Part shown: positions 7,452 to 42,777 of the stretch, one piece after another
Layout: each line of letters opens with the position of its first letter
How positions within the stretch are numbered: the first letter of the stretch is position 1
IMG/VR virus record: IMGVR_UViG_3300017991_005548
Location: 62,001 to 126,000 of that record
Strand: one strand, 5' to 3'
DNA length: 64,000 bases
Made by a program: the position numbers and the translations under genes
Notes under the pieces: generated by a model
What the model was told of the DNA's origin: nothing
The model's input: only the letters and a program-made list of their open reading frames with translations
The model's database searches: none

Positions 7452-7574
7452 GAAAAACGCCAGTGTATTGCTCATTTATACTACCTCACAAAGTTTAGAA
7501 TGCTGAATAGAACCTTATTCAAGTTCACTTTTAATAGTACTGTATGGGTGGGATTCGAACCCACATCTCTGGCT
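7452..7574 (-). ncRNA. circularly permuted tRNA-like RNA 1
   Basis: 3' half (GCCAG, AGAT, T arm GTGGG-TTCGAAT-CCCAC, CCATACA; 7540-7574) precedes 5' half (TGTGAGG, D arm, CTGGC; 7452-7490); linker holds the CAGCA element. Confidence 0.7.
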
Positions 7575-7657: not shown

Positions 7658-7785
7658 ATGAGTCGGAAGGAATCGAACCTTCATTCCCTGGTTGATTTAT
7701 TAAACATCAAATAGTTGCTGGAACGAAACTTATACAGTTTCACTTGGTTTTATGTCCAGGAGTTCTACCATTAAACTACGACCCA
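7658..7785 (-). ncRNA. tRNA-like gene with CAGCAA element inside the anticodon arm
   Basis: Acceptor TGGGTCG/CGACTCA, D and T arms intact, stem CCTGG/CCAGG enclosing ~60 nt; no CCA. Confidence 0.7.
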
Positions 7786-8055: not shown

Positions 8056-8146
8056 TGGTGACGCAGACGGGATTCGAACCCGCAAAGGAATCTCTTCCTA
8101 CCAGATTGAAAGTCTGGTTACTTCAGGCCAATTTGTATACTGCGCC
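8056..8146 (-). tRNA. tRNA-Glu(TTC) with long variable arm
   Basis: CCAGA-CTTTCAA-TCTGG; V arm AGGAA-GAGA-TTCCT; CCA. Confidence 0.85.
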
Positions 8147-8152
8147 ATTTTT

Positions 8153-8273
8153 TAGTCAGGACGGCTGGATTCGAACCAACTCCTTTAGCTCCTCAAGCTA
8201 AAATAAATATTGCTGTAGCGAACCTTATTGTCAAGTTCATGTTTATAACGTGCTACCATTACACTACGTCCTG
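8153..8273 (-). ncRNA. tRNA-like gene (C1-G72 body, GAG anticodon) with CAGCAA element between D and anticodon arms
   Basis: CAGGACG/CGTCCTG acceptor, 47-nt insert after D arm, TTAGC-TTGAGGA-GCTAA, ends A-CTA. Confidence 0.7.
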
Positions 8274-8318
8274 ATGGTCTGACCCTCAAAAATCATAAGT
8301 CTGATTCTCGAAAAGTCA

Positions 8319-24233: not shown

Positions 24234-25706
24234 ATGGTAAACAGAATATTTGACGATTATCAAGGACCATCCATTAAAATAAATGGAGTCTGTTATAAAT
24301 GGGCTGGGGAAACAACTGAACCCTTTAATTCTCACCCCAGTGAAATTGAAGGAACTTTTGATACTTGCTTGGAATGTGCAATAGAAAGTTCTTCAAGTTT
24401 GTCTTCTGAATCTGAGTCCTCTGAATCAATTAATAACTTTAGCTCTTCTTCTGAATCAATTGAAAATACTTCATCAAGTGAATCAATTGCATGTCAAGAA
24501 GGAGATATCCAATTTGTGCTAAGTCAAGCAAACGCATTACAATTCTCTCCCCCAGTATTTCAAGGAGCCATTGACGAAGGAATTGTTTGTATTGATGGAA
24601 TTCGAGAGGGAACTTACACAAACTATGGGCAGGAAGATCTTATTGTTTTGAGTGACCCAGGAGCTTATGTGAATTATACTGCTGGACAAACTGTTGAAGT
24701 TTGTGAAGGGCAATGTCCTCAAGTTTCAAGTTCTTCAAGTTCTGAAGCATATAGTTCAGAGAGTTCAAGTAGTTCGTTCCCTGAAGGTATATTCTTAAAA
24801 ATGGAATACGATGCAAGTACGAGTCTTACAACACAGCTTCGATTCGATAATGTAATTGATTACGGAGATGCTATTATATATTGGGGAGATGGAGATACTA
24901 CTGATATTAGTGGTACTGGGAACGGTACAGAAAACCATGTTTATGATTCTAGTGGAACCTATGAGGTTAAAATAAGTGCTACTGGCAATTTTTGGTTAGG
25001 ACAATCTACCACTACTTCATATCGAACAGGGTATAAAAAAATTACCCAATGGGGAGATGTAAAATGGTCCAGATGTGATTTCTCCTTTGCCAACCTTCCA
25101 GACCTAGAGGTGACAGCAACAGATTATCCTGATTTATCAAATGTAACAGATGTTAGATATATGCTTGCTGGTTGTACGAATATGGTTGGAGACCAGCATG
25201 ACTGGGCATGGGATATGACAGGAGTAACTGATTTAAGCCACATGTTTCAGAATTCTCTTGCTTTTAACGGCACTGTTCAAAACTTTAGCAACATGGGAGA
25301 TGCAGAGAACCTGTCGTTCATGTTTGTGGGGAATGGCAGAAGTAATCCTGGTTCGTTCAATCAACCGATTGGAGTTTGGGATACATCTAGTGTAACAGAT
25401 ATAACTCAAATGTTACAATATCAGCCTGATTTTGATCAGGATTTATCAAACTGGGATGTTAGTAACGTGACAGATACTGCTCAATTTATGGAGAATTTTG
25501 GTGTTGAAGAGTTATCAAATGCAAACTATAACGCACTTCTGATTTCATGGGGTGGACAATCATTAATCTCTCATGGCGATACTATTTCTTTTGGAAAAAG
25601 TAAGTATACAGATGACAGCGGAGATTGCCCAAGTTGTCCTATTACAACAGGCAGAAGTGCTATAGCGGCGGCATGGGGTACATTACGAGATGGTGGGTCT
25701 GTTTAA
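24234..25706 (+). CDS. repeat-family protein 5 with PKD-like and BspA/DUF285-like repeats
   Basis: Shared N-domain; IYWGDG...HVYDSSGTYEV; FNQPIGVWDTSSVTD...FDQDLSNWDVSNVT. Confidence 0.7.
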   Translation: MVNRIFDDYQGPSIKINGVCYKWAGETTEPFNSHPSEIEGTFDTCLECAIESSSSLSSESESSESINNFSSSSESIENTSSSESIACQEGDIQFVLSQANALQFSPPVFQGAIDEGIVCIDGIREGTYTNYGQEDLIVLSDPGAYVNYTAGQTVEVCEGQCPQVSSSSSSEAYSSESSSSSFPEGIFLKMEYDASTSLTTQLRFDNVIDYGDAIIYWGDGDTTDISGTGNGTENHVYDSSGTYEVKISATGNFWLGQSTTTSYRTGYKKITQWGDVKWSRCDFSFANLPDLEVTATDYPDLSNVTDVRYMLAGCTNMVGDQHDWAWDMTGVTDLSHMFQNSLAFNGTVQNFSNMGDAENLSFMFVGNGRSNPGSFNQPIGVWDTSSVTDITQMLQYQPDFDQDLSNWDVSNVTDTAQFMENFGVEELSNANYNALLISWGGQSLISHGDTISFGKSKYTDDSGDCPSCPITTGRSAIAAAWGTLRDGGSV

Positions 25707-25716
25707 GGAGTAAATT

Positions 25717-26307
25717 ATGGCTAACAGAATATTTGATGATTATCAAGGAGCATCCGTTAAAATAAACGGTATTTGCTATAAATTTATTGGAGAAACAACA
25801 AGACCATTTGATTCTCATCCAAGTGAAATTGAAGGAACTTTTGATACTTGTTTGGCATGTGCTGTTGAAAGTTCATCTTCAGAAAGTACCCAGTCTTCCA
25901 GTTCTGAATCAATTAATAACTTTAGCTCTTCTTCTGAATCAATTGAAAATACTTCATCAAGTGAATCAATTGCATGTCAAGAAGGAGATATCCAATTTGT
26001 GCTAAGTCAAGCAAACGCTTTGCAATTTTCTCCCCCAGTATTTTTCGGAGTTATTCCAGAAGGAACCGTTTGTGTTGATGGGGTACATGAAGGAACTTAT
26101 ACAAATTATGGTGGAGAAGATTTAATTGTTTTTAGTGATTCAGGAGCTTATCAAAGCTATACTGATGGACAAACCATTGAAGTTTGTGAAGGGGTTTGTT
26201 TGCCACAAGCAGTTTATAAGTATAGCAATCTACAACTGAATGTATCACCAAACACATATAGATATACTCCAGTTATAATTGAGTCAAGTTCATCAAGTTC
26301 AGGATAA
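25717..26307 (+). CDS. repeat-family protein 6
   Basis: Shared N-domain; ~110 bp near-identical to protein 5 (24421-24535 vs 25904-26018). Confidence 0.6.
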   Translation: MANRIFDDYQGASVKINGICYKFIGETTRPFDSHPSEIEGTFDTCLACAVESSSSESTQSSSSESINNFSSSSESIENTSSSESIACQEGDIQFVLSQANALQFSPPVFFGVIPEGTVCVDGVHEGTYTNYGGEDLIVFSDSGAYQSYTDGQTIEVCEGVCLPQAVYKYSNLQLNVSPNTYRYTPVIIESSSSSSG

Positions 26308-26322
26308 ATTTTAGGAGGATTT

Positions 26323-26805
26323 ATGGATTTATATTTTTTACAAGACCAAGGAGACGCTTTGGTTTATAATGACGGAATTGCATATGAGTTTGTTGAGCAA
26401 ACAGTTCAAGTCCCAAATGCAAGTGGAGCGCAAGTTATTGAAGGAAACATCTCTTCATTTAATTTCAGCATTGCTGACGCACAATTAAAAACAGCTTACA
26501 CTGCTGGTGAACATGCTTTGGCTTTTTATGTTGATGAAAATAAAATTGAAGTTGACATGCCCCTTGCCAACACTTGGTATACTTTCCCCGATGTTCCAGT
26601 TGCAGGAGTTATTCGGGTTTGGCAAACGGGAGCATTTTACCCAAACATAAAAATTAATGGTATTGATCAGGCCGTTAACGCAGGAACAAGCAAAGCTAGT
26701 GCAATGCCATACAATGTTGCTGTTGGAGATGTAATCGAAATACGAGAACCAACTACTAGTGGAAACACTGGGTACGGATATATATTGCCATTTGTTTATC
26801 CATAA
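26323..26805 (+). CDS. hypothetical beta-rich protein
   Basis: ORF track, RBS AGGAGG. Confidence 0.55.
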   Translation: MDLYFLQDQGDALVYNDGIAYEFVEQTVQVPNASGAQVIEGNISSFNFSIADAQLKTAYTAGEHALAFYVDENKIEVDMPLANTWYTFPDVPVAGVIRVWQTGAFYPNIKINGIDQAVNAGTSKASAMPYNVAVGDVIEIREPTTSGNTGYGYILPFVYP

Positions 26806-28834: not shown

Positions 28835-28925
28835 TGGTGGGAGTAGCAGGACTTGAACCTGCGTTTACCTTTCGGCCTCCTGTGTATCAGACAGGCGCTC
28901 TAACCAAATACTGAGCTATACTCCC
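28835..28925 (-). tRNA. tRNA-Ile(GAT) with long variable arm
   Basis: Loop CTGATAC; V arm GCC-GAAA-GGT; CCA. Confidence 0.85.
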
Positions 28926-29867: not shown

Positions 29868-30383
29868 TTATCTGAGGGTATCGTACAAGTCCTCATACCT
29901 AGCTCTCCACCAGTAAGCTTTAGGTACATTGCCAATGCAGAAATAATCCCCTGCATCCTTGGCCTTTAAATAAAAATTATGTGCTTCCTCATATAAGCCA
30001 AAGATCCTGGCAGAACGAATAATCCTGGTAATTCTAAGTAAGTTATGGTTGAACTCTTTACACCAAACCCTTTGTTTATCTTTGTCATCAACATCCAGGC
30101 CATAGAAATCGAGCATACGTTCAACAGCATTGGTCATATTCTCTGTGATTTCTGGGATATCTCTGCATTCTTCCACTATCATTGGGTTAATAACTGGATA
30201 TGTCATTGCCCAATTAGATGTTTCGTGCAAAGGGAAGATCCATTGAACCTGATCATGACACTTTTCCATTTCTTCATCACTACAATAAAGAATGTCCTCA
30301 TAAATCCTTCCTTTGTAATCAGCGTGATTGCCTGACAAGAATTTTACAATCCAATCTTTATCTGTAATGATCATTTTAGTCAC
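29868..30383 (-). CDS. OGFr N-terminal-like domain protein
   Basis: MEKCHDQVQWIFPLHETS and HNLLRITRIIRS motifs. Confidence 0.75.
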   Translation of the reverse strand: MTKMIITDKDWIVKFLSGNHADYKGRIYEDILYCSDEEMEKCHDQVQWIFPLHETSNWAMTYPVINPMIVEECRDIPEITENMTNAVERMLDFYGLDVDDKDKQRVWCKEFNHNLLRITRIIRSARIFGLYEEAHNFYLKAKDAGDYFCIGNVPKAYWWRARYEDLYDTLR

Positions 30384-32022: not shown

Positions 32023-32280
32023 TTACCGATTTTCAAAATGTTCTTCAATTTTTTTATTCTGTTCGGTAGCGTACTCATTATAAGCCTTTATTCCAATCTC
32101 AAGCTTGGTAGCATACTTGACCATGGACTCAAAGTCTTTCTTGTCCAGAGCAGGGCTTAAAACGGGCCTATCAGGCATCGGGATTATTGGATACCTCTGA
32201 TTTATCATCGTCGTGTGATGACACCCCGTTAGAACCGTCAATCCAATCGTCAAGATTAACATCATCTTTATCCACTGCAT
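32023..32280 (-). CDS. small lipoprotein (possible o-spanin)
   Basis: Lipobox LTGC-HHT as in ORF 10124-10381; Pro-rich then coiled. Confidence 0.5.
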   Translation of the reverse strand: MQWIKMMLILTIGLTVLTGCHHTTMINQRYPIIPMPDRPVLSPALDKKDFESMVKYATKLEIGIKAYNEYATEQNKKIEEHFENR

Positions 32281-32497
32281 TTTGGGCCTCCTGGATTCTT
32301 CTTTCTAGTTCGATTGCTTTTTTCATGCTCTGTAACACTTCTTCCATTGCTTCAATGTCAGAGCCTTCGGCATGGTCAAGTTTATTGGCAATCATCTTCA
32401 GAAGAGATTTGATGATCTCAAGTGCAGTAGTTGCCAATAGCATTTCTGTTCCTGTAAAACGTGCAGACATAATTGATCTCCTTCGTTGCAGAAACAT
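32171..32497 (-). CDS. hypothetical protein
   Basis: ORF track; likely start MSARF. Confidence 0.45.
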   Translation of the reverse strand: MFLQRRRSIMSARFTGTEMLLATTALEIIKSLLKMIANKLDHAEGSDIEAMEEVLQSMKKAIELERRIQEAQNAVDKDDVNLDDWIDGSNGVSSHDDDKSEVSNNPDA

Positions 32498-32563: not shown

Positions 32564-33997
32564 TTAGACGGTGACCCCTTCTGGGACTACGATTTCATAC
32601 TTCTCGATTGCTCGATCAAGTACTGCCATTGGCGAGAAATCAGTGCCTCCGAGAACTGCGCCTAAGATTGAAGGACTGAAGCCACTTACAAGAGCAACAT
32701 TCTCATGCGTACCTCTTGCAGGACTTCCTGCATATCCAGCAGTATTCCAATATACAATCTTTGGACGACTGTATCCATTTGCTTCCCACTCTTCCATGCA
32801 TCTTTCAATAGTGGTCTTATCGCAGTTACTAGCGCCAGAGCACCAGCCTCCACCATTATCGAACTGCATGTCTGAAATGATCAACAGACAGTTTGGAATC
32901 TGTTCATCAGTTACGTTGAACATCTTTGCAGAGTTCAGGATCTGATCAAGAGCCGCCTTGACGTTCGTTGATCCACAATATCCTTCTCTTCTGCAACGCT
33001 GAATTCCCTGAACAAAAGTCTTTCCCTTCCAATCGACAAGGTGACTGTCGTTTGAGAATGGAATGAACTTCCTGTAGAAAGGGTTATCCTTTCCAACCCT
33101 GTCAGAGCAGTACAATCCCAAACTGGTTGAGATATCAATAGCTCTGATAGAACCAGAGACAGTAACTCCCATAGATCCAGAGAAGTCACAAATTGGCATG
33201 ATTCTCATGTTGCAGTCTTCCATGAAGTTTGGAAGAGCTTCAAACTGAGCATTTGCCAACTTACCATCCTTGTTAGCAGTACGAAGAACGTCATGTGGGA
33301 ACAAAGCACTTGCGTTAACCTTGTTGTCAGAGTCCTCGTCAGTCAAAGACTCTCTCCACTGATCGTATCTTGCAGGATCATGCTTCAAGAATGCGTTAGC
33401 AGATCTTGCCATTGCGACAGAAGGAACAGTGTTGTAGTCAATGTCATGCCAGTCGCCTGAGCACATTGCAGTCTCTACAACATTAGTGTACTCAGCCAAG
33501 TGCTTTCTGAATACCTTTGGAGACATTCCGAGAGCCTTTCTAAGCTTTGCGAAAACAACCTTGTTCTTCTTCTCTCTTGGTGCCCACTTGCAAGCAAGAC
33601 CATGCTTATCAGCAATAGCTCTTGCCCAGTACTGGATTGCAGTATCTTCGCAAGGAGTATCGATACATGCAGTCAAGTCATCCCAACGTCCAGTCTCTGG
33701 AATAAGATGAATATTGACAGTAATCCACTCAGGATGCTTCTCAGCCATCCACTTCAATACAGAACGGAATCCGCTTCTGTTACCTGCTCCACCTCTAGCA
33801 TCACGAAGCCAGAAAGCAAGCTTTGCGGCACGAAGTTGATCGGACTTGAACGCAGGCTTAAACAAGTTCAGAGCACCTGCCTCCGAACCGTAGTAGCTAC
33901 CACGCTTCTCGAAAAGTGATCCTGCCTTGGAGAAGAACTCCAAAAGTGCGTTTCCAGTTGAGTCATACAGAAAGTCGTTGTTGTGTCCTCTTGCCAT
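32564..33997 (-). CDS. TROVE-like/DUF2828 family protein with vWA domain
   Basis: FWLRDARGGAG.R..FR, GRWDDL, KWAPRE, DFSGSM MIDAS, ISDMQFD, IVYWN. Confidence 0.8.
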   Translation of the reverse strand: MARGHNNDFLYDSTGNALLEFFSKAGSLFEKRGSYYGSEAGALNLFKPAFKSDQLRAAKLAFWLRDARGGAGNRSGFRSVLKWMAEKHPEWITVNIHLIPETGRWDDLTACIDTPCEDTAIQYWARAIADKHGLACKWAPREKKNKVVFAKLRKALGMSPKVFRKHLAEYTNVVETAMCSGDWHDIDYNTVPSVAMARSANAFLKHDPARYDQWRESLTDEDSDNKVNASALFPHDVLRTANKDGKLANAQFEALPNFMEDCNMRIMPICDFSGSMGVTVSGSIRAIDISTSLGLYCSDRVGKDNPFYRKFIPFSNDSHLVDWKGKTFVQGIQRCRREGYCGSTNVKAALDQILNSAKMFNVTDEQIPNCLLIISDMQFDNGGGWCSGASNCDKTTIERCMEEWEANGYSRPKIVYWNTAGYAGSPARGTHENVALVSGFSPSILGAVLGGTDFSPMAVLDRAIEKYEIVVPEGVTV

Positions 33998-34028
33998 CGT
34001 ACCATCCTCCTATTGTTGGTTTTGTGTC

Positions 34029-34094
34029 AAAAAAAAGACCAGTCAAACTTGGTTCCGAGTCCCATCTCGCGTATGGAACAAAGTCTAACTGGTC
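34029..34094 (-). terminator. long terminator-like hairpin just upstream of the TROVE-like gene
   Basis: GACCAGTTAGACTT/AAGTTTGACTGGTC + U8. Confidence 0.7.
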
Positions 34095-34111
34095 AAAGTT
34101 AAAAATCGGAA

Positions 34112-34459
34112 CAGGTTAGCAATTTTGGTTTTCATTTCAAGTGAAAGTTTTGGTTGCTGTAACTAACCTTCTATCCTAAATTAAAAATTTGAACAGACTG
34201 ACTTGTTTTTTTTAGCATAAAAAATTTTGAGTTGCTGAATGCAGTCTTATATCAAATTGTTTTTCTAAATTTTCCTTTTTCTTGTTTTCAAAGAAACAAG
34301 TGAAACAGCTTGGGTTTTCCATCCTTTATTTCAGACCTCGATGAATTTGGGTCCTCAAATTTATTTTTAAAACCCTCTCGACTGGGTTCTCGTTTTATTT
34401 CTGTCAGGGCGACTCTGACGCTCGTTTTATCGTGTTTTTTGGTTGCAGTAACCAAGCTT
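34112..34459 (-). ncRNA. structured leader with three CAGCAA elements and anticodon-loop mimics
   Basis: AAG-N8-C(A/T)GCAA at 34154-70, 34232-48, 34443-59, each closed by a helix+CTG; TTTCA-CTTGAAA-TGAAA and T6-ATGCTAA-A6 hairpins. Confidence 0.7.
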
Positions 34460-34477
34460 TATTCAGTTGTTGGTTCC

Positions 34478-34505
34478 ATTATAAGGATTACGAAAAACTT
34501 TTCAA
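34478..34505 (-). promoter_or_regulatory. promoter of TROVE leader
   Basis: TTGAAA-N16-TATAAT. Confidence 0.8.
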
Positions 34506-34534
34506 GTCGGTTTTGAATATTTTTTTTGAATTTT

Positions 34535-35407
34535 TTATTTTTCGATTTCGAACGGTGGATCTCCGAATAGGATTCTGGAGTATTCAAGCATCCTTTTATC
34601 AAGTGTAAGAACTTTCATTAAATGCTTTTTTGCCTTTTCTTCCTTGAAACTCCTTTCCCATCTATCAAGTGTCTTTAGATTTTGGCCCCTTTTTTTGTTC
34701 TCAAAAGTGCTACCACCACCATATTGGGTAATAACATTGAGTCTCCTGTCAGTGAACTCAACATCTAATTGTTTACAGATATTTTTCCTGTAATCAATGT
34801 CAACAAACCATTGGTCATATATAATAGGAATGAAGTTTTCAGGGATATGATTTGTGATCCCTAGAAACTCTTCCGCATAACCTATCCAAAGAGATGAAAA
34901 CGTTTTGGGGCCATTTATGCGGTGCCTCAGACTTCTCCAGAAGAATGCGCTTGTTATATGATTCCAAGGAGATCTTAGGATAAAGATAAAGAAGCTTTTA
35001 GGGCTAATTGAGCGTAAGTTCTCATATTCAGGGTTAGTTTGCTTCAATCTTTCTAAAAGACCCTTTTCTTCATCTTTGTAAAACTTATCGTAGATCCTGG
35101 CAAAGGATTCTGGAGATGAATTTTCTGATCCAAGAACGATAGCCTGTCTTTTATCCCTGTAATGATAGTCAAGAACTTCGATATCGCTCTTCTTTTTTTC
35201 ACCTTTAGCAAAGTGTTGGTATCTCCACTTTCTTCCTGGAGGGTTATGGTTAATTTTAAATGACGAGTTCGATGGCTTACAACAACTCAAATTATTTTTG
35301 TAGATAGCATGATCAAAAGTTCCTAAAAGCCAAGAGCTAATTCCATGTTGTCCACATCTATTCATGCCACAAACATGAATGGTTTTTTCAGTCAGATATT
35401 CTGTCAT
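34535..35407 (-). CDS. sulfotransferase-like protein
   Basis: GMNRCGQHGI (5'-PSB-like) and ILRSPWNHITS (3'-PB-like) segments; inference. Confidence 0.5.
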   Translation of the reverse strand: MTEYLTEKTIHVCGMNRCGQHGISSWLLGTFDHAIYKNNLSCCKPSNSSFKINHNPPGRKWRYQHFAKGEKKKSDIEVLDYHYRDKRQAIVLGSENSSPESFARIYDKFYKDEEKGLLERLKQTNPEYENLRSISPKSFFIFILRSPWNHITSAFFWRSLRHRINGPKTFSSLWIGYAEEFLGITNHIPENFIPIIYDQWFVDIDYRKNICKQLDVEFTDRRLNVITQYGGGSTFENKKRGQNLKTLDRWERSFKEEKAKKHLMKVLTLDKRMLEYSRILFGDPPFEIEK

Positions 35408-35409
35408 TC

Positions 35410-35997
35410 TTAGCCCTCTACTATAGATATCTTTGCTACTCTGTCAGGCTGTGTTAACGCCATTCCAATCTTACCCCTGGAATCATAAATGATTCCAATG
35501 TACTCAGCATCTTCTAATGCGTAGATCTCTTTCTGTGGAATTTTATCACTCCAAAAAATCCTAGCACCCTCAAATGATCCTACCGAAGTCACTCCATCAA
35601 TGATCTCCAGATCCCAGCTAAAGAACTTTCCTGAGGGATCTACTTCTTTTTTAATGAACATACCCATCATTGGGTTCATGATGATAGCTTTCGGGTCTTC
35701 TAAAAGCTTACAAAGCTCATACACACCTTGTATAGTAAAGCCTCCGACAGATAAAGCATGTTTCTTTGGTAAAATACTTGCTTCTAGTAAAAGAAAAAAT
35801 AGTTCATCTTCTTTTTCTTGTCCGACTTGCTCTAAAGGAGGGATCAAAGCGGAATCTCTGCCAGTTACATGATCAACAGTATGATCAGGCATCATTAGAT
35901 ATCCACCAAGCTCTCTGTTTATTTCATAAACTGGATGAAGTCCACCTAAGTCATCATTAATTAATAGGATTCTTGCAAGGTTGTTTAATTTTTTCAT
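35410..35997 (-). CDS. hypothetical protein
   Basis: ORF track. Confidence 0.55.
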   Translation of the reverse strand: MKKLNNLARILLINDDLGGLHPVYEINRELGGYLMMPDHTVDHVTGRDSALIPPLEQVGQEKEDELFFLLLEASILPKKHALSVGGFTIQGVYELCKLLEDPKAIIMNPMMGMFIKKEVDPSGKFFSWDLEIIDGVTSVGSFEGARIFWSDKIPQKEIYALEDAEYIGIIYDSRGKIGMALTQPDRVAKISIVEG

Positions 35998-36045: not shown

Positions 36046-36537
36046 TTAACATCTCTTGTCTGCGGCCCAGGTTGCGGCCCATGAGTGAGGCTTGTGTTCG
36101 CAGTGGAACCCTTGAGCGGCAACCATACCAACCAACTCTGGTAGGTATTTTGAGCTTTTGTACTTAAGATTTGGATTAACATCCAAGTGAATGGTGATGA
36201 TCTTCGCAGGGTCAATCTTACCATTTAGGAACCATCCTACCTCAAGAGACCTAAAGGCTTCAATCATCAATCTCTGTCTCAAATTACTGATTCTCTCAGT
36301 TCTTTCTGAAGATAGGATTGCGCATCCACCTAATCCAAGGGTATATGCTACGAGGCAAGTAGTAAAGGTGCAGTACTTTTTGCCTTTTCTGGAATAGTTC
36401 TGGCTATCTGTACCAATGTAGAACTCCGCATTGGGATGTTCTCCCATAAAGTCTATCACTTCGATAGCTGTCCTATCCCCAAACCTTTTCCACTTCCAGT
36501 TAATAAAAGGCGTGTACTTCCCCTCGTAGAATCCCAT
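36046..36537 (-). CDS. RNase H-like YkuK (DUF458) family protein
   Basis: IGTDSQ...IHLDVN...KP.SWAA..AAD. Confidence 0.75.
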   Translation of the reverse strand: MGFYEGKYTPFINWKWKRFGDRTAIEVIDFMGEHPNAEFYIGTDSQNYSRKGKKYCTFTTCLVAYTLGLGGCAILSSERTERISNLRQRLMIEAFRSLEVGWFLNGKIDPAKIITIHLDVNPNLKYKSSKYLPELVGMVAAQGFHCEHKPHSWAATWAADKRC

Positions 36538-40473: not shown

Positions 40474-40678
40474 TCACCATTATACAGCCAAGATTAGTAT
40501 CAAAGTAACTAAGTCCATATTCTTCCAGAACTTCTAGGACCAGTTCCCTCATTTTAAGGGAATTTCCTGTAACAACCTCAAAAGGAGGGTCATAATTAAA
40601 AATATGAGAGTCAAGTAAAGACCGAACATCTTGATGCTTAACCCCATGTAAATCTAACTTCATTTTCCGTGTAACCAA
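40451..40678 (-). CDS. Smr-domain-like small protein
   Basis: LDLHG...VVTGNS motif. Confidence 0.6.
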   Translation of the reverse strand: MVTRKMKLDLHGVKHQDVRSLLDSHIFNYDPPFEVVTGNSLKMRELVLEVLEEYGLSYFDTNLGCIMVIEEPNKR

Positions 40679-41325
40679 CCCTTCCGATTATGAGTCTCTT
40701 TCATTTGAACCTCTTCGGAAGGGACATAAAGACAGTGGTCCTGGATATATCGTTGAACTTCTTCGTCCAAATATGGCAAAAAGTCTGATCTGCCATGTTT
40801 TTTGAAGTGATCTCTTGCCATAGTAGACGAACATTCGGTAATTTTGTCTTCTACGTCCAAGAAAAGATGGGGAGGATTCTTATACCATCGATATTTCTTC
40901 TTCAATTCGATTCCACTTCTTGTTACAACAACAAATTTGGCAATTTCCCGTAATTTTTTGAAATTATGCCAGTTAATGAAGTTGTTTACGTTGTCAGCAC
41001 CAATGATAAAACTGATATCAACATCAAGTTGTGGGTCTTTGAGGAGGGTTTGGACTAATTCGAAGGTCGAACCACTCAGTTCATGTCTAATTTCGTAATC
41101 AAATACATGAAGTTTCGGATTTTTTCTGCAAGCGATAGCGCACATCCTGAGTCTGTGTAAATTAAGCTCTAAATTCTTACCAAATCGATGTTTATTGCAA
41201 GGCAAGAGCCAAACTTCATCAAATTTTCCTTTTTCAAGGACAAATTCAGCTACTTGTATATGAGCAAGTGTTGGGGGATTGAAAGCCCCGCCAAGAATGG
41301 CAATTTTAGTCATAGTTTTCTCCAA
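40660..41325 (-). CDS. nadD: nicotinate/nicotinamide mononucleotide adenylyltransferase
   Basis: GGAFNPPTLAH, FIIGADN...W, CSSTMAR. Confidence 0.9.
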   Translation of the reverse strand: MEKTMTKIAILGGAFNPPTLAHIQVAEFVLEKGKFDEVWLLPCNKHRFGKNLELNLHRLRMCAIACRKNPKLHVFDYEIRHELSGSTFELVQTLLKDPQLDVDISFIIGADNVNNFINWHNFKKLREIAKFVVVTRSGIELKKKYRWYKNPPHLFLDVEDKITECSSTMARDHFKKHGRSDFLPYLDEEVQRYIQDHCLYVPSEEVQMKETHNRKGWLHGK

Positions 41326-41331
41326 TGATTT

Positions 41332-41419
41332 TGGCGGAAGAGGTGGGATTCGAACCCACGGATGCTCTCACATCAACGGTTTTCAAGACCGCCGCCTTCG
41401 ACCTCTCAGCCACTCTTCC
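41332..41419 (-). tRNA. tRNA-Ser(TGA)
   Basis: Loop CTTGAAA, long V arm, CCA. Confidence 0.95.
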
Positions 41420-41428
41420 AAATTTTGA

Positions 41429-41562
41429 TGGACAAGACGGGATTCGAACCCGCAAATCGAGATGCCTCACCCATTGCTTAGGAGAAAAATAACTCCTGCC
41501 CATGGTAGCGACATTACTCTTAAGACCAGAGCCTCAACTTTGCCAATTTAAGTTACTTGCCC
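41429..41562 (-). ncRNA. tRNA-like RNA with branched ~75-nt insert replacing the anticodon loop
   Basis: GGGCAAG/CTTGTCC acceptor, D arm, T arm GCGGG-TTCGAAT-CCCGT; two inserted hairpins; no CCA. Confidence 0.65.
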
Positions 41563-41576
41563 GTCTTGTCAAATTT

Positions 41577-41698
41577 TGGCGGATGAGGTAGGATTCGAAC
41601 CTACACTGTAGCGGTTTCTGTTTTTTGGTTGCTGAAGAGAACCTTTTTGTCAAGTTCATTTTTTGGACCGCCGTCTCTGCCAGTTGGACTACTCATCC
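41577..41698 (-). ncRNA. tRNA-like gene with CAGCAA element in the anticodon loop
   Basis: GGATGAG/CTCATCC-GCCA; stem GCGGT/ACCGC encloses 51 nt. Confidence 0.75.
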
Positions 41699-41951: not shown

Positions 41952-42689
41952 TTATACCCCAAAAATCAATAATTCAAAATCGCCATTCTCATGTTCTACG
42001 ATTGCAGAGCAATGCTCTACCCAATCTCCGCAGTTATAGTAGTCAATCCCATCAATTTTTTTGATTATAGGAGAATGAACATGACCACATATAACTCCAT
42101 CGCAATGATTCTCTTTGGCATACTCTGAAAGGAGACCTTCAAACTCTCCAACATAAGTAACAGCTTTTTTAAAATTTTCCCTGGCAAACTTTGATAAACG
42201 AACTCTTTTCACTCCGAACATCCTTAAACATCTTGCCAGGAACTCATTCATTGAAACAAGAGTGTCATAACCCCAACTTCCAACCTTTGAGATCATGACT
42301 CCAATTCTTGAAAAAAGAATGAAATCAAACTTATCTCCATGAGTGATGTAATACTTCTTTCCAAAACTGTGATAATATGTTTCTTTACAAATTTCCAGGT
42401 TCGGATAATGAAAACTGTCCAAAAGTTCCATCATACCATGATCATGATTTCCTAAAACATAATGGACGTTACAGTGTTTTGACATTTTTAGAAGTCTTCT
42501 AATGACTTCTGTTTGGTTTTTATCCCATTTAGTTCTGTCTAATCTCCAAAGATCAAAGATATCTCCGATAAGATATAAATTGTCACATTCAGTCTCTTTT
42601 AGGAATTTAAGTAGTTCTTTAGATTTGCATCCAACACTGGCCATGTGGCAGTCTGAGATGAATACTGCTCGGTACTTAGTTTTACTCAT
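41952..42689 (-). CDS. LpxH-like calcineurin-type metallophosphoesterase
   Basis: FISDCH, GDIFD, GNHD, THGD, GHVH, NCGDW; likely start MSKTK at 42689. Confidence 0.85.
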   Translation of the reverse strand: MSKTKYRAVFISDCHMASVGCKSKELLKFLKETECDNLYLIGDIFDLWRLDRTKWDKNQTEVIRRLLKMSKHCNVHYVLGNHDHGMMELLDSFHYPNLEICKETYYHSFGKKYYITHGDKFDFILFSRIGVMISKVGSWGYDTLVSMNEFLARCLRMFGVKRVRLSKFARENFKKAVTYVGEFEGLLSEYAKENHCDGVICGHVHSPIIKKIDGIDYYNCGDWVEHCSAIVEHENGDFELLIFGV

Positions 42690-42777
42690 ATTTTTCCTCC
42701 TATAAGTAGTAAGGAATAATACTGAGAAAACAGGATAAAACCTACTCAATAATGAGTTGTTAACCAAGTATTAATAT

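What the first reader, a model, noticed from the sequence alone, without database searches (positions are those of the whole stretch)
34029..34505. TROVE/DUF2828 gene has a ~480-nt leader with anticodon-loop mimics and a terminator
After the promoter come three CAGCAA elements. One encloses three A-rich-spaced hairpins; the other two enclose ASL-like hairpins with 7-nt loops. CTTGAAA is identical to the loop of tRNA-Ser(TGA) at 41332, and ATGCTAA resembles tRNA-Ser(GCT) TTGCTAA. A 14-bp hairpin + U8 then precedes the gene. Ro60/TROVE proteins are established partners of tRNA-mimicking Y RNAs and RNA repair systems. Inference: a decoy for, or sensor of, host anticodon nucleases that gates TROVE expression, or a standalone Y-like RNA.
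Basis: partly seen in the sequence, partly recalled or inferred. Interest (0 to 1): 0.8.

Follow-up and report, generated by a model that had tools for sequence, protein, structure and literature searches.

The report
Y-like small RNAs beside phage Ro60-like gene
The 480-base stretch before this huge phage's Ro60-like (DUF2828) gene is a promoter-to-terminator unit of three small RNAs from a widespread, undescribed family that has the design of Dictyostelium Class I RNAs, often mimics tRNA anticodon loops, and most likely supplies the protein's RNA partners.

Summary
On the minus strand, 34505..34029 has a near-consensus promoter, three modules, a strong hairpin+U8 terminator, then the SD and the DUF2828 gene.

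Each module has this plan: (A)AG, a 7-bp covarying closing stem, UU[A/U]C[A/U]GCAA, a variable insert, the 3' arm, then CUGU(U). This is not a one-off. A covariance model finds 262 copies in 112 of 146 DUF2828 loci. All lie on the gene's strand and all 7 pairs show compensatory changes. Unrelated viral DNA (~355 kb) gave no hit. Copies also occur in Listeria phage A511/P100, Felix O1-like, Campylobacter and cluster-L mycobacteriophages, and inside phage tRNA arrays.

About a fifth of the short modules carry a 5-bp stem with a 7-nt YU-NNN-RN loop (49/222; shuffles give 0-3). M1's loop equals the phage's own tRNA-Ser(UGA) loop. More distant loci enclose a permuted tRNA-like body, as YrlA does.

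The protein models confidently as a Ro60 ring plus vWA domain.

The module plan matches every published hallmark of Dictyostelium Class I RNAs, but scores below Rfam's threshold.

Best reading: stand-alone Y-RNA-like partners of a Ro60-like anti-defence protein, not a sensing leader. Binding, expression and the decoy role are untested.

The parts
34478..34505 (-). Sigma-70-type promoter: TTGAAA (34505..34500), 16-nt spacer, TATAAT (34483..34478)
   Evidence: 11/12 match. The -35 (CTTGAAAAA) and the -10 are conserved in six relatives.
34303..34460 (-). Module M3 (large, about 158 nt): AAAG, arm AGCUUGG (34458..34452), UU, ACUGCAA (34449..34443), three internal hairpins with A-rich spacers, arm CCAAGCU (34313..34307), GUUU
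   Evidence: Fold. The closing stem covaries in relatives: AGCUUAG/CUAAGCU, AGAUUGG/CCAAUCU, AGUUUGG/CUAAACU. It is too long for model R1; only its 5' half aligns.
34192..34249 (-). Module M2 (58 nt): UAAG, arm ACUG.., UUCAGCAA, insert, arm CAGUCU, GUU
   Evidence: R1 43.8 bits, E 3.8e-9, not in the seed. Rfam Dicty_Class_I_RNA 20.6 bits. The stem covaries in relatives, AAGGUUG/CAACCU.
34206..34224 (-). Inner hairpin of M2: U6, loop AUGCUAA, A6. The loop is 6/7 identical to the tRNA-Ser(GCU) loop UUGCUAA.
   Evidence: Sequence. It is non-canonical (A at position 32, A/U-only stem) and is not counted by the strict ASL scan.
34110..34171 (-). Module M1 (62 nt): GAAG, arm GUUAG.., UUACAGCAAC, insert, arm CUAACC, UGUU
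   Evidence: R1 50.6 bits, seed member. Rfam Dicty_Class_I_RNA 22.9 bits, E 0.1. Conserved in relatives.
34130..34146 (-). Anticodon-stem-loop mimic in M1: UUUCA / CUUGAAA / UGAAA. The loop is identical to that of the phage tRNA-Ser(UGA).
   Evidence: Strict scan hit. tRNA sequence. The same loop CUUGAAA recurs on unrelated stems in L187, L198 and L178. MFE folding prefers a 4-bp alternative.
34029..34094 (-). Intrinsic terminator: 20-bp hairpin with one mismatch (34094..34037) plus U8 (34036..34029)
   Evidence: -28.3 kcal/mol, z -5.2, 0/200 shuffles as stable. The hairpin plus U-run is kept with different stem sequences in relatives.
34006..34011 (-). Shine-Dalgarno AGGAGG, 8 nt before ATG 33997
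   Evidence: Sequence.
32564..33997 (-). DUF2828+DUF7788 protein, 477 aa: Ro60-fold HEAT ring plus vWA domain with an intact MIDAS motif (D271-x-S273-x-S275, T344, D376 invariant)
   Evidence: Pfam. PHROG 850 'RNA-binding protein'. Invariant columns. AF2 pLDDT 91.5, pTM 0.90. Foldseek top 11 are all Ro60/TROVE, E 1e-8 to 7e-7, TM 0.53-0.61.
41580..41698 (-). Related element elsewhere in the window: a tRNA-like gene whose anticodon arm holds AAGGUUCUCUUCAGCAACCAAAAAAC, the same core as M1 and M3
   Evidence: Rfam tRNA 36.8 bits with a long insert. R1 14.6 bits. Sequence. Similar elements lie at 8290..8160 and 7785..7658.

Best explanation
The region is a self-contained non-coding RNA unit: promoter, three tandem small RNAs, terminator. 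The RNAs are the likely partners of the Ro60-fold DUF2828 protein encoded just downstream.

Each RNA has two parts. The first is a conserved platform: a 7-bp terminal helix with fixed A-U and G-C outer pairs, the single-stranded UU(A/U)CAGCAA next to its 5' arm, and a 3' CUGU tail. The second is a variable 'display' part. In M1 it is a tRNA-Ser anticodon-loop mimic, in M2 a weaker Ser(GCU)-like one, and in M3 three hairpins.

By analogy with Ro60 and its Y RNAs, the platform is inferred to dock on the protein. The display part is inferred to tether or occupy enzymes that read tRNA anticodon loops, such as nucleases, repair enzymes or modification enzymes. That would place the particle in the phage's tRNA-centred counter-defence.

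The terminator lets the RNAs be made in excess. The protein gene would then be expressed by read-through.

Shown: the anatomy, family-wide conservation and covariation, strand and position linkage to the gene, the Ro60 fold, and the excess of anticodon-like loops.

Inferred: RNA-protein binding, processing into about 60-nt species, and the tether or decoy role.
For: 1. R1 finds 262 modules at E<=0.01 in 112 of 146 DUF2828 loci. All are on the gene's strand and 181 lie within 500 nt upstream.
2. Controls: 0 hits in about 355 kb of unrelated viral DNA, and only M1 and M2 in the 64-kb window with filters off.
3. All 7 stem pairs show compensatory changes. 98.9% of cells are paired, with 238 double-change cells against 67 in shuffles; slid registers give 26-44% paired. 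In a motif-only selection, 206/254 instances have a complementary arm against about 95 for shuffled arms.
4. Core positions are 87-99% conserved.
5. The promoter-M3-M2-M1-terminator-gene layout is conserved in relatives.
6. The protein has the Ro60 fold.
7. Precedents: Ro60 orthologues have Y RNAs encoded next to them on the same strand (PMC4201824). Thermus phage phiLo Ro60 binds two upstream-encoded Y-like RNAs (PMC12135203).
8. ASL-like hairpins occur in 49/222 modules against 0-3 in shuffles. More distant loci and a mycobacteriophage enclose a permuted T-arm / acceptor hairpin / D-arm, as YrlA does.
9. Stand-alone status: some modules sit in tRNA arrays 2-5 nt from the flanking tRNAs.
10. 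Function of the protein family: Bas63 gp130, a Ro60-like protein of a Felixounavirus, counters the ppl defence system (PMC11482910). The A511 homologue lies 1.3 kb from an RtcB ligase gene. The CKA15 homologue is packaged in virions and lies downstream of very abundant non-coding transcripts (PMC12282133).
Against: - No RNA data exist for this phage. No RNA run was listed and only DNA contigs were laid.
- Binding is untested.
- Single-sequence stability of M1 and M2 is unremarkable (z -1.3 and -0.16).
- Bas63 gp130 alone, from a plasmid or inserted in T7, rescues T7 on ppl. That phenotype therefore does not need the phage's own modules.
- The one abundant CKA15 RNA with published coordinates (26,236-26,727) is not a module.
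- Only about a fifth of modules carry a strict ASL mimic, and M2's is non-canonical.
- 34 of 146 loci have no hit, though many of these are cut at contig ends.
Confidence: 0.7

Rival explanations
1. Cis-regulatory leader. The modules and terminator form an attenuator or translational operator. DUF2828 protein, or cleavage of the ASL mimics by a host anticodon nuclease, would set how much transcription or translation reaches the gene.
For: The modules lie in the 5' region, and here a strong terminator sits between them and the gene. In many loci the last module ends directly at the ribosome-binding site, as in ..CUGAAAGGAGG..ATG in L163, L202, L054 and L169. 95 hits lie within 100 nt of the start. 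A bound protein could therefore repress translation there as a secondary effect.
Against: Modules also lie downstream of the gene in Felixounavirus, mycobacteriophage, L060, L057 and L098, or in distant tRNA arrays. No conserved antiterminator pairing exists: the 5-bp match between M1's 3' arm and the terminator is absent in relatives. Several tandem copies with different inserts are not what an operator needs.
Confidence: 0.12
2. Protein-independent decoys or sponges. The RNAs act alone as bait for host anticodon nucleases or tRNA-modifying enzymes, and their linkage to DUF2828 reflects only a shared tRNA-related gene neighbourhood.
For: The excess of anticodon-like loops. The 'anticodon' differs between close relatives: UGA here, CAU in L127 and L128. 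Some modules sit in tRNA arrays with no DUF2828 gene in the fetched stretch.
Against: The most conserved part is the stem/CAGCAA/CUGU platform, not the loop. Most modules have no strict ASL. Linkage to the gene holds down to 35% protein identity and is always on the same strand.
Confidence: 0.1
3. Degenerate tRNA remnants or processing punctuation. The modules are leftovers of tRNA genes, or signals that help RNases cut polycistronic tRNA transcripts, with no function of their own.
For: They occur in tRNA arrays at tRNA-like spacing. The window also has tRNA-like genes carrying the same core.
Against: The short modules lack acceptor, D and T elements. The conserved CAGCAA core and the AAG/CUGU ends are not tRNA features. 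Strong covariation and wide conservation argue for selection on the RNA itself.
Confidence: 0.05

Closest known systems
Bacterial and phage Y RNAs (YrlA/YrlB of Salmonella, Yrn1 of Deinococcus, Yrl1/Yrl2 of Thermus phage phiLo) with Ro60/Rsr
   Same: They are small RNAs encoded next to, and on the strand of, a Ro60-fold ring+vWA protein, often several per locus (one large, one or more small). The 5' and 3' ends pair in a terminal helix with a conserved element on its 5' side. The variable part mimics tRNA, and the distant DUF2828 loci even have the YrlA-type permuted T-arm / acceptor hairpin / D-arm.
   Different: The protein is Pfam DUF2828+DUF7788, not TROVE, with 11-15% identity to Ro60 structures. 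The conserved element is UU(A/U)CAGCAA, single-stranded after the helix, not GNCGAAN0-1G / CGAA / GGUCCGA. Many members mimic only an anticodon stem-loop, the part YrlA lacks. There is no Rfam Y_RNA match except a 16-bit chance-level hit on the terminator.
Dictyostelium Class I RNAs (Rfam RF01414)
   Same: Every published hallmark is shared: about 60 nt; a short covarying stem joining the ends with an invariant outer G-C; conserved start AAG and end CUGU; the motif (CC)UUACAGCAA directly after the 5' arm with the same near-invariant C, C, A, A; a variable A-rich remainder; genes in clusters (PMC7919456; Rfam consensus). RF01414 gives the top two Rfam matches in the region, on M1 and M2, and scores 32.3 bits on an L131 module.
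   Different: Scores stay below the gathering threshold of 41.5. The phage RNAs come from bacterial promoters as tandem arrays, not from DUSE promoters. Class I RNAs were reported as unique to dictyostelids and bind the RRM protein Rnp1A. No DUF2828 partner is known there. Homology and convergence cannot be told apart with the data at hand.
Terminator-containing sensing leaders (T-box and other attenuators)
   Same: A long 5' region with tRNA-related hairpins and a terminator before the gene.
   Different: There is no Rfam match, no antiterminator alternative and no specifier or T-box elements. The elements also occur away from any 5' UTR.
Small stable RNAs in phage tRNA clusters (for example T4 species 1 and 2 RNAs; from my own knowledge, not checked here)
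   Same: Non-tRNA small RNAs interleaved with phage tRNA genes and presumably released by tRNA-processing enzymes.
   Different: No sequence or structural relationship was tested, and T4 is not among the phages with a DUF2828 match that were listed.

Membership tests
Y RNA / YrlA-type Ro60 partner RNAs | Encoded within a few kb of, and on the same strand as, a Ro60-fold protein gene | tested here: met
   All 262 hits are on the gene's strand, mostly within 500 nt. The Ro60 fold is supported by AF2 and Foldseek.
Y RNA / YrlA-type Ro60 partner RNAs | Terminal helix formed by the 5' and 3' ends | tested here: met
   A 7-bp helix in which all pairs covary.
Y RNA / YrlA-type Ro60 partner RNAs | Conserved Ro-binding motif GGUCCGA / GNCGAAN0-1G (CGAA) | tested here: not met
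   The conserved element is UU(A/U)CAGCAA.
Y RNA / YrlA-type Ro60 partner RNAs | tRNA-like domain (T-arm, acceptor-like hairpin, D-arm) in at least one RNA per locus | tested here: inconclusive
   It is present in distant loci and in a mycobacteriophage. In the window only anticodon-loop mimics and separate tRNA-like genes carrying the core were seen.
Y RNA / YrlA-type Ro60 partner RNAs | Physical binding to the Ro60-like protein | not testable with these tools
   Needs EMSA, RIP or a structure.
Y RNA / YrlA-type Ro60 partner RNAs | Match to Rfam RF00019 at the gathering score | tested here: not met
   Only 16 bits (gathering score 38, E 2.7), and on the terminator hairpin.
Dictyostelium Class I RNA (RF01414) | Short (about 6 bp) covarying stem joining the ends, with a conserved outer G-C pair | tested here: met
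   G4 97% and C-5 97%. Definition.
Dictyostelium Class I RNA (RF01414) | The 11-nt motif CCUUACAGCAA adjacent to the 5' arm | tested here: met
   U11 96%, C13 98%, A14 87%, G15 98%, C16 98%, A17 99%, A18 92%. M1 reads UUACAGCAA. The first two motif positions are not conserved in phages.
Dictyostelium Class I RNA (RF01414) | Conserved termini AAG ... CUGU | tested here: met
   AG in 214/247 and AAG in 140/247; CUG in 213/247 and CUGU in 142/247. All three window modules have them.
Dictyostelium Class I RNA (RF01414) | Length 42-65 nt | tested here: met
   Median 62.5 nt. M1 is 62 nt and M2 is 58 nt. M3 (158 nt) is outside the range.
Dictyostelium Class I RNA (RF01414) | Rfam gathering score (41.5 bits) | tested here: not met
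   22.9, 20.6 and 32.3 bits.
Dictyostelium Class I RNA (RF01414) | DUSE promoter about 60 nt upstream, with individual transcription | tested here: not met
   One sigma-70-type promoter serves three tandem modules.
Dictyostelium Class I RNA (RF01414) | Binding to Rnp1A/CIBP | not testable with these tools
   No biochemical data are available.
Transcription-attenuation leader | Mutually exclusive terminator and antiterminator structures, conserved in relatives | tested here: not met
   Only a 5-bp match was found, and it is not conserved.
Transcription-attenuation leader | Element confined to the 5' UTR of the regulated gene | tested here: not met
   Modules also lie downstream of the gene or in tRNA arrays.

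The most novel reading that the evidence does not exclude
The phage modules and the Class I RNAs of dictyostelid amoebae are one RNA family, by shared descent or by transfer between phage or bacterial prey and bacterivorous amoebae. Its ancestral role would be as the Y-RNA-like partner of DUF2828/TROVE-fold proteins. If so, Class I RNAs are not a dictyostelid invention tied to multicellularity. It would also predict that an amoebal Ro60-fold protein binds them. [quoted passage not shown]
Probability: 0.3. Interest if true: 0.9.

Novelty: new variant of a known kind. Interest (0 to 1): 0.8.

Why it matters
DUF2828 proteins are encoded by at least 695 cultured phages. These include therapy and biocontrol workhorses: Felix O1-like phages, Listeria P100/A511, and Campylobacter, Staphylococcus and Enterococcus phages. 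One member is an experimentally shown counter-defence factor (PMC11482910).

Two recent papers guessed that Y RNAs must be encoded nearby, but neither identified them (PMC11482910, PMC12282133). This analysis supplies concrete candidates, a consensus and a covariance model.

The candidates extend the Ro60/Y-RNA principle to a second protein family with a different docking motif. They add anticodon-stem-loop mimicry to the tRNA-body mimicry already known from YrlA. That makes the link between Ro-like particles and tRNA-targeting immunity testable in laboratory phage-host pairs.

The match to Class I RNAs offers a first lead on the biochemical role of an abundant amoebal RNA class whose function has been open for twenty years.

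Tried and rejected
- A 16-mer scan of viral contigs returned 42 loci. Apart from the window phage's own two contigs (L007, L042), 38 of the other 40 were chance matches. I reused those 38 as a negative control.
- No DNA-level relatives exist among cultured phages.
- A sequence search of the PDB with a profile found nothing. Only the fold comparison worked.
- Rfam at gathering threshold found only tRNAs in the window and in 24 loci.
- The weak Y_RNA hit (16 bits) falls on the terminator and I treat it as chance.
- RNA evidence for this phage: none was listed. The DNA contigs were identical and uninformative.
- Single-sequence folding statistics for M1 and M2 are not significant, so the case rests on comparison.
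- I looked for an antiterminator between M1's 3' arm and the terminator. It is 5 bp and not conserved, so I rejected it.
- I tried to learn whether Dictyostelium has a DUF2828 protein. The protein atlas showed only viral clusters, a literature search was uninformative, and the Avesson 2011 paper is not held.
- The most abundant CKA15 non-coding RNA (26,236-26,727, equivalent to L205 1958-2449) is not a module and matches no Rfam family. Coordinates of the other two abundant regions are not in the text.
- Whether the mycobacteriophage ET08 YrlA of Chen et al. belongs to this family could not be settled, because no supplement is held.

Full report
**What is there.** All genes around the finding run on the minus strand, so I read the intergenic stretch 34534..33998 on that strand. 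It contains, in order:

- A promoter, TTGAAA-16-TATAAT, at 34505..34478. It matches 11 of 12 consensus positions.
- A large module M3 at 34460..34303.
- Two short modules, M2 at 34249..34192 and M1 at 34171..34110.
- A 20-bp hairpin with one mismatch at 34094..34037, followed by U8. It folds at -28.3 kcal/mol, z -5.2.
- AGGAGG, then the ATG at 33997 of a 477-aa DUF2828+DUF7788 protein.

The window comes from a 476-525 kb phage contig from a sediment metagenome. It holds 34 tRNA genes.

**The modules share one plan.** Each starts (A)AG, then has a 7-nt arm, UU, then [A/U]C[A/U]GCAA(C). A variable insert follows, then the complementary arm, then CUGU(U). TTACWGCAAC is over-represented in the window: 3 occurrences against 0.26 expected. 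Folding the whole leader recovers the modular layout.

**It is a widespread family tied to DUF2828 genes.** I collected 160 loci that encode relatives of the protein, at 35-80% identity, from viral and metagenome contigs.

- The 7-mer AC[AT]GCAA alone recurs upstream of most of these genes, often twice or more.
- I built a covariance model (R1) from 63 short modules with only the closing stem as structure.
- R1 finds 262 matches at E<=0.01 in 112 of 146 non-redundant loci. Every match is on the strand of the gene.
- Of these, 181 lie within 500 nt upstream and 30 lie downstream. There are usually 1-4 per locus.

In the window, with filters off, only M1 (a seed member, 50.6 bits) and M2 (not in the seed, 43.8 bits, E 3.8e-9) are significant. 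M3 has every core feature, but its 130-nt insert defeats the model. Its closing stem covaries among close relatives.

As a negative control I used 38 unrelated viral loci (about 355 kb). They gave no hit. Two further loci that did hit turned out to hold true modules inside tRNA arrays.

**Structure is supported by covariation.**

- All seven pairs show compensatory changes.
- 98.9% of cells are paired.
- There are 238 double-change cells against 67±6 in shuffles.
- Sliding the partner by 1-3 columns drops pairing to 26-44%.

That alignment is fitted to the model, so I also tested instances chosen by the sequence motif alone. Of 254, 206 have a fully complementary arm downstream, against about 95 for shuffled or reversed arms.

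Core positions are 87-99% conserved: A3, G4, U7, U11, C13, A14, G15, C16, A17, A18, and at the 3' end C-5, U-4, G-3.

**The layout in this phage is conserved.** Six relatives with 63-80% protein identity keep the same order. They have the promoter (-35 CTTGAAAAA invariant), M3, M2, M1, then a hairpin plus U-run with different stem sequences, then the SD and the gene. In this clade it is therefore a promoter-to-terminator RNA unit. Read-through is the only evident way to express the gene from this promoter. More distant loci have no terminator, and the last module abuts the ribosome-binding site.

**tRNA mimicry.**

- Among 248 unique modules, MFE folding of the inserts gives 93 hairpins with 7-nt loops out of 259. 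Fifty-two of them fit Y-U-NNN-R-N on a stem of at least 4 bp. Shuffled inserts give 0-1.
- A fold-independent scan for a 5-bp stem plus such a loop finds 49 of 222 modules, against 0-3 in ten shuffles. Forty of the 49 read CU-NNN-AA, and four are T-loops.
- M1 is one of these hits. Its loop CUUGAAA is identical to the anticodon loop of the phage's own tRNA-Ser(UGA). The same loop recurs on unrelated stems in other loci.
- M2's loop AUGCUAA resembles the tRNA-Ser(GCU) loop but is non-canonical.
- The 'anticodon' differs between close relatives: CAU in L127 and L128.
- In loci at 35-38% protein identity, and in cluster-L mycobacteriophages, the insert is a permuted T-arm / acceptor hairpin / D-arm. 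This is the topology described for YrlA.

**Stand-alone RNAs rather than a leader.**

- An RNA-first pattern scan of viral contigs returned nine loci. Five are on DUF2828 contigs. The other four sit inside tRNA arrays on the tRNA strand, 2-5 nt from the neighbouring tRNAs. L023 and L039 show the same arrangement.
- In Felixounavirus VpaE1 the modules lie downstream of the gene, between tRNAs.
- In Listeria phage A511 three lie directly upstream of the gene.
- In Campylobacter phage F358 one lies upstream.
- In mycobacteriophage OhShagHennessy three lie downstream and are followed by a terminator.

These positions do not fit an obligatory cis-acting sensor.

**The protein.**

- The AF2 model has pLDDT 91.5 and pTM 0.90.
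- Its eleven best PDB matches are all Ro60/TROVE structures: Xenopus, human and Thermus phage phiLo. E-values run from 1e-8 to 7e-7, TM 0.53-0.61, over the full length at 11-15% identity. vWA/MIDAS domains follow lower in the list.
- The MIDAS residues are invariant in the family.
- PHROGs calls it 'RNA-binding protein'.
- 695 cultured phages encode homologues. The five I checked are all Pfam DUF2828+DUF7788, not TROVE.

**What the literature adds.**

- Ro60 orthologues have Y RNAs encoded beside them, and YrlA mimics tRNA (PMC4201824).
- Thermus phage phiLo Ro60 binds two upstream-encoded Y-like RNAs with a CGAA motif and recruits host PNPase (PMC12135203).
- Jumbo-phage TROVE proteins have been placed among RNA-repair systems (PMC7824862).
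- In Bas63, a Felixounavirus, the Ro60-like gp130 lies just upstream of the tRNA genes, the same arrangement as in VpaE1 and Felix O1. It counters the ppl defence system and also works when moved alone into T7. The authors guessed that some 'tRNA genes' are Y RNAs (PMC11482910).
- In Listeria phage CKA15 the homologue CKA15_055 is found in virions. Three very abundant non-coding regions lie within 2 kb upstream and were guessed to be Y RNAs (PMC12282133). The three modules map to the unannotated gap at 25,283-25,585, just upstream of CKA15_055. However, the one region with published coordinates (26,236-26,727) is a different RNA.
- No paper in the library describes DUF2828 function or these modules.

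**Resemblance to Dictyostelium Class I RNAs.** In a permissive Rfam scan of the region, the top two matches by score and E-value are both to RF01414 and fall on M1 and M2 (22.9 and 20.6 bits; E 0.1 and 0.39). A module in L131 reaches 32.3 bits. All are below the gathering score of 41.5.

The published definition of Class I RNAs has these parts: 42-65 nt; a 6-bp covarying stem joining the ends with an invariant 5' G; an 11-nt motif next to the 5' arm; conserved start AAG and end CUGU; a variable remainder; clustered genes (PMC7919456). The phage consensus matches it point by point. That paper reports Class I RNAs as unique to dictyostelids. I cannot distinguish homology from convergence. I also could not establish whether dictyostelids have a DUF2828 protein. 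The DdR-21 pull-down included an uncharacterised protein, DDB_G0281243.

**Most likely mechanism.**

- Shown: the anatomy, conservation, covariation, linkage to the gene, the Ro60 fold and the loop mimicry.
- Inferred: the stem/CAGCAA/CUGU platform docks on the DUF2828 ring, as Y RNAs dock on Ro60.
- Inferred: the variable part presents an anticodon-loop or tRNA-body mimic to a tRNA-reading enzyme, as tether, gate or decoy.
- Inferred: the particle serves tRNA-centred counter-defence.
- Inferred: the terminator sets an excess of RNA over protein.

The T7 rescue by gp130 alone shows that at least one activity of the protein does not need the phage's own RNAs.

**Verdict.** It is a new variant of the Ro60/Y-RNA kind, with an unexpected likeness to an amoebal RNA class.

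Noticed in passing
window 41580-41698 (-), 8160-8290 (-), 7658-7785 (-), and a fragment at 7500-7545 (-): tRNA-like genes in the tRNA arrays keep the acceptor, D and T arms, but the anticodon arm is replaced by a 45-65 nt insert. The insert holds a hairpin (GAACUU..AGGUUC) followed by (U)UCAGCAA/ACAGCAA, the same core as M1 and M3 (for example CAGCAACCAAAAAAC). They may be non-permuted versions of the tRNA-like modules seen in distant loci. ARAGORN does not call them. Rfam's tRNA model scores two of them (41580-41698 and 7658-7785) at 36.8 and 46.7 bits with long inserts.
   Followed up: partly
L205 1958-2449 (Listeria phage A511; CKA15 record 26,236-26,727): This is a roughly 490-nt unannotated region behind a consensus TTGACA-17-TATAGT promoter. 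In CKA15 it accounts for up to 67% of phage transcripts (PMC12282133). It is not an R1 hit and matches no Rfam family, so it is a second unknown abundant phage RNA about 650 nt upstream of the module array.
   Followed up: partly
L058 1424-1504: An 81-nt match to the tmRNA model consists only of the tRNA-like domain, with the 302-nt middle missing. It sits in a phage tRNA array next to a DUF2828 locus.
   Followed up: no
L205 6282-7493 and 5549-5980 (A511): An RtcB-type 'tRNA splicing ligase' and an HD phosphohydrolase lie 1.3 kb and 0.6 kb downstream of the A511 DUF2828 gene. This echoes the rsr-yrlBA-rtcBA operon of Salmonella.
   Followed up: no
window 36046-36537 (-), 40660-41325 (-), 41952-42767 (-), 29868-30383 (-): The neighbourhood contains an RNase H-like protein, a cytidylyltransferase-like nucleotidyltransferase, a calcineurin-like metallophosphoesterase and an OGFr_N-domain protein, interleaved with tRNA arrays. 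The direct neighbours of the DUF2828 gene (34535-35407, 35410-35997, 32171-32497) match nothing in Pfam or PHROGs.
   Followed up: partly
window 34262-34300 (-): Between M3 and M2 there is a hairpin, CUUGUUU-CUUUGA-AAACAAG, plus an A-rich run. It is an insertion absent from all six aligned relatives.
   Followed up: no
window 8056-8146 (-), 28835-28925 (-), 41429-41562 (-): Several tRNA genes are unusually long. tRNA-Glu(UUC) and tRNA-Ile(GAU) are 91 nt, and there is a 134-nt Rfam tRNA match. This suggests inserts or introns in this phage's tRNAs.
   Followed up: no
L112 6297-6441: A strong match to the Polynucleobacter-1 RNA family (83 bits) lies on a phage contig about 2 kb downstream of a DUF2828 gene.
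   Followed up: no
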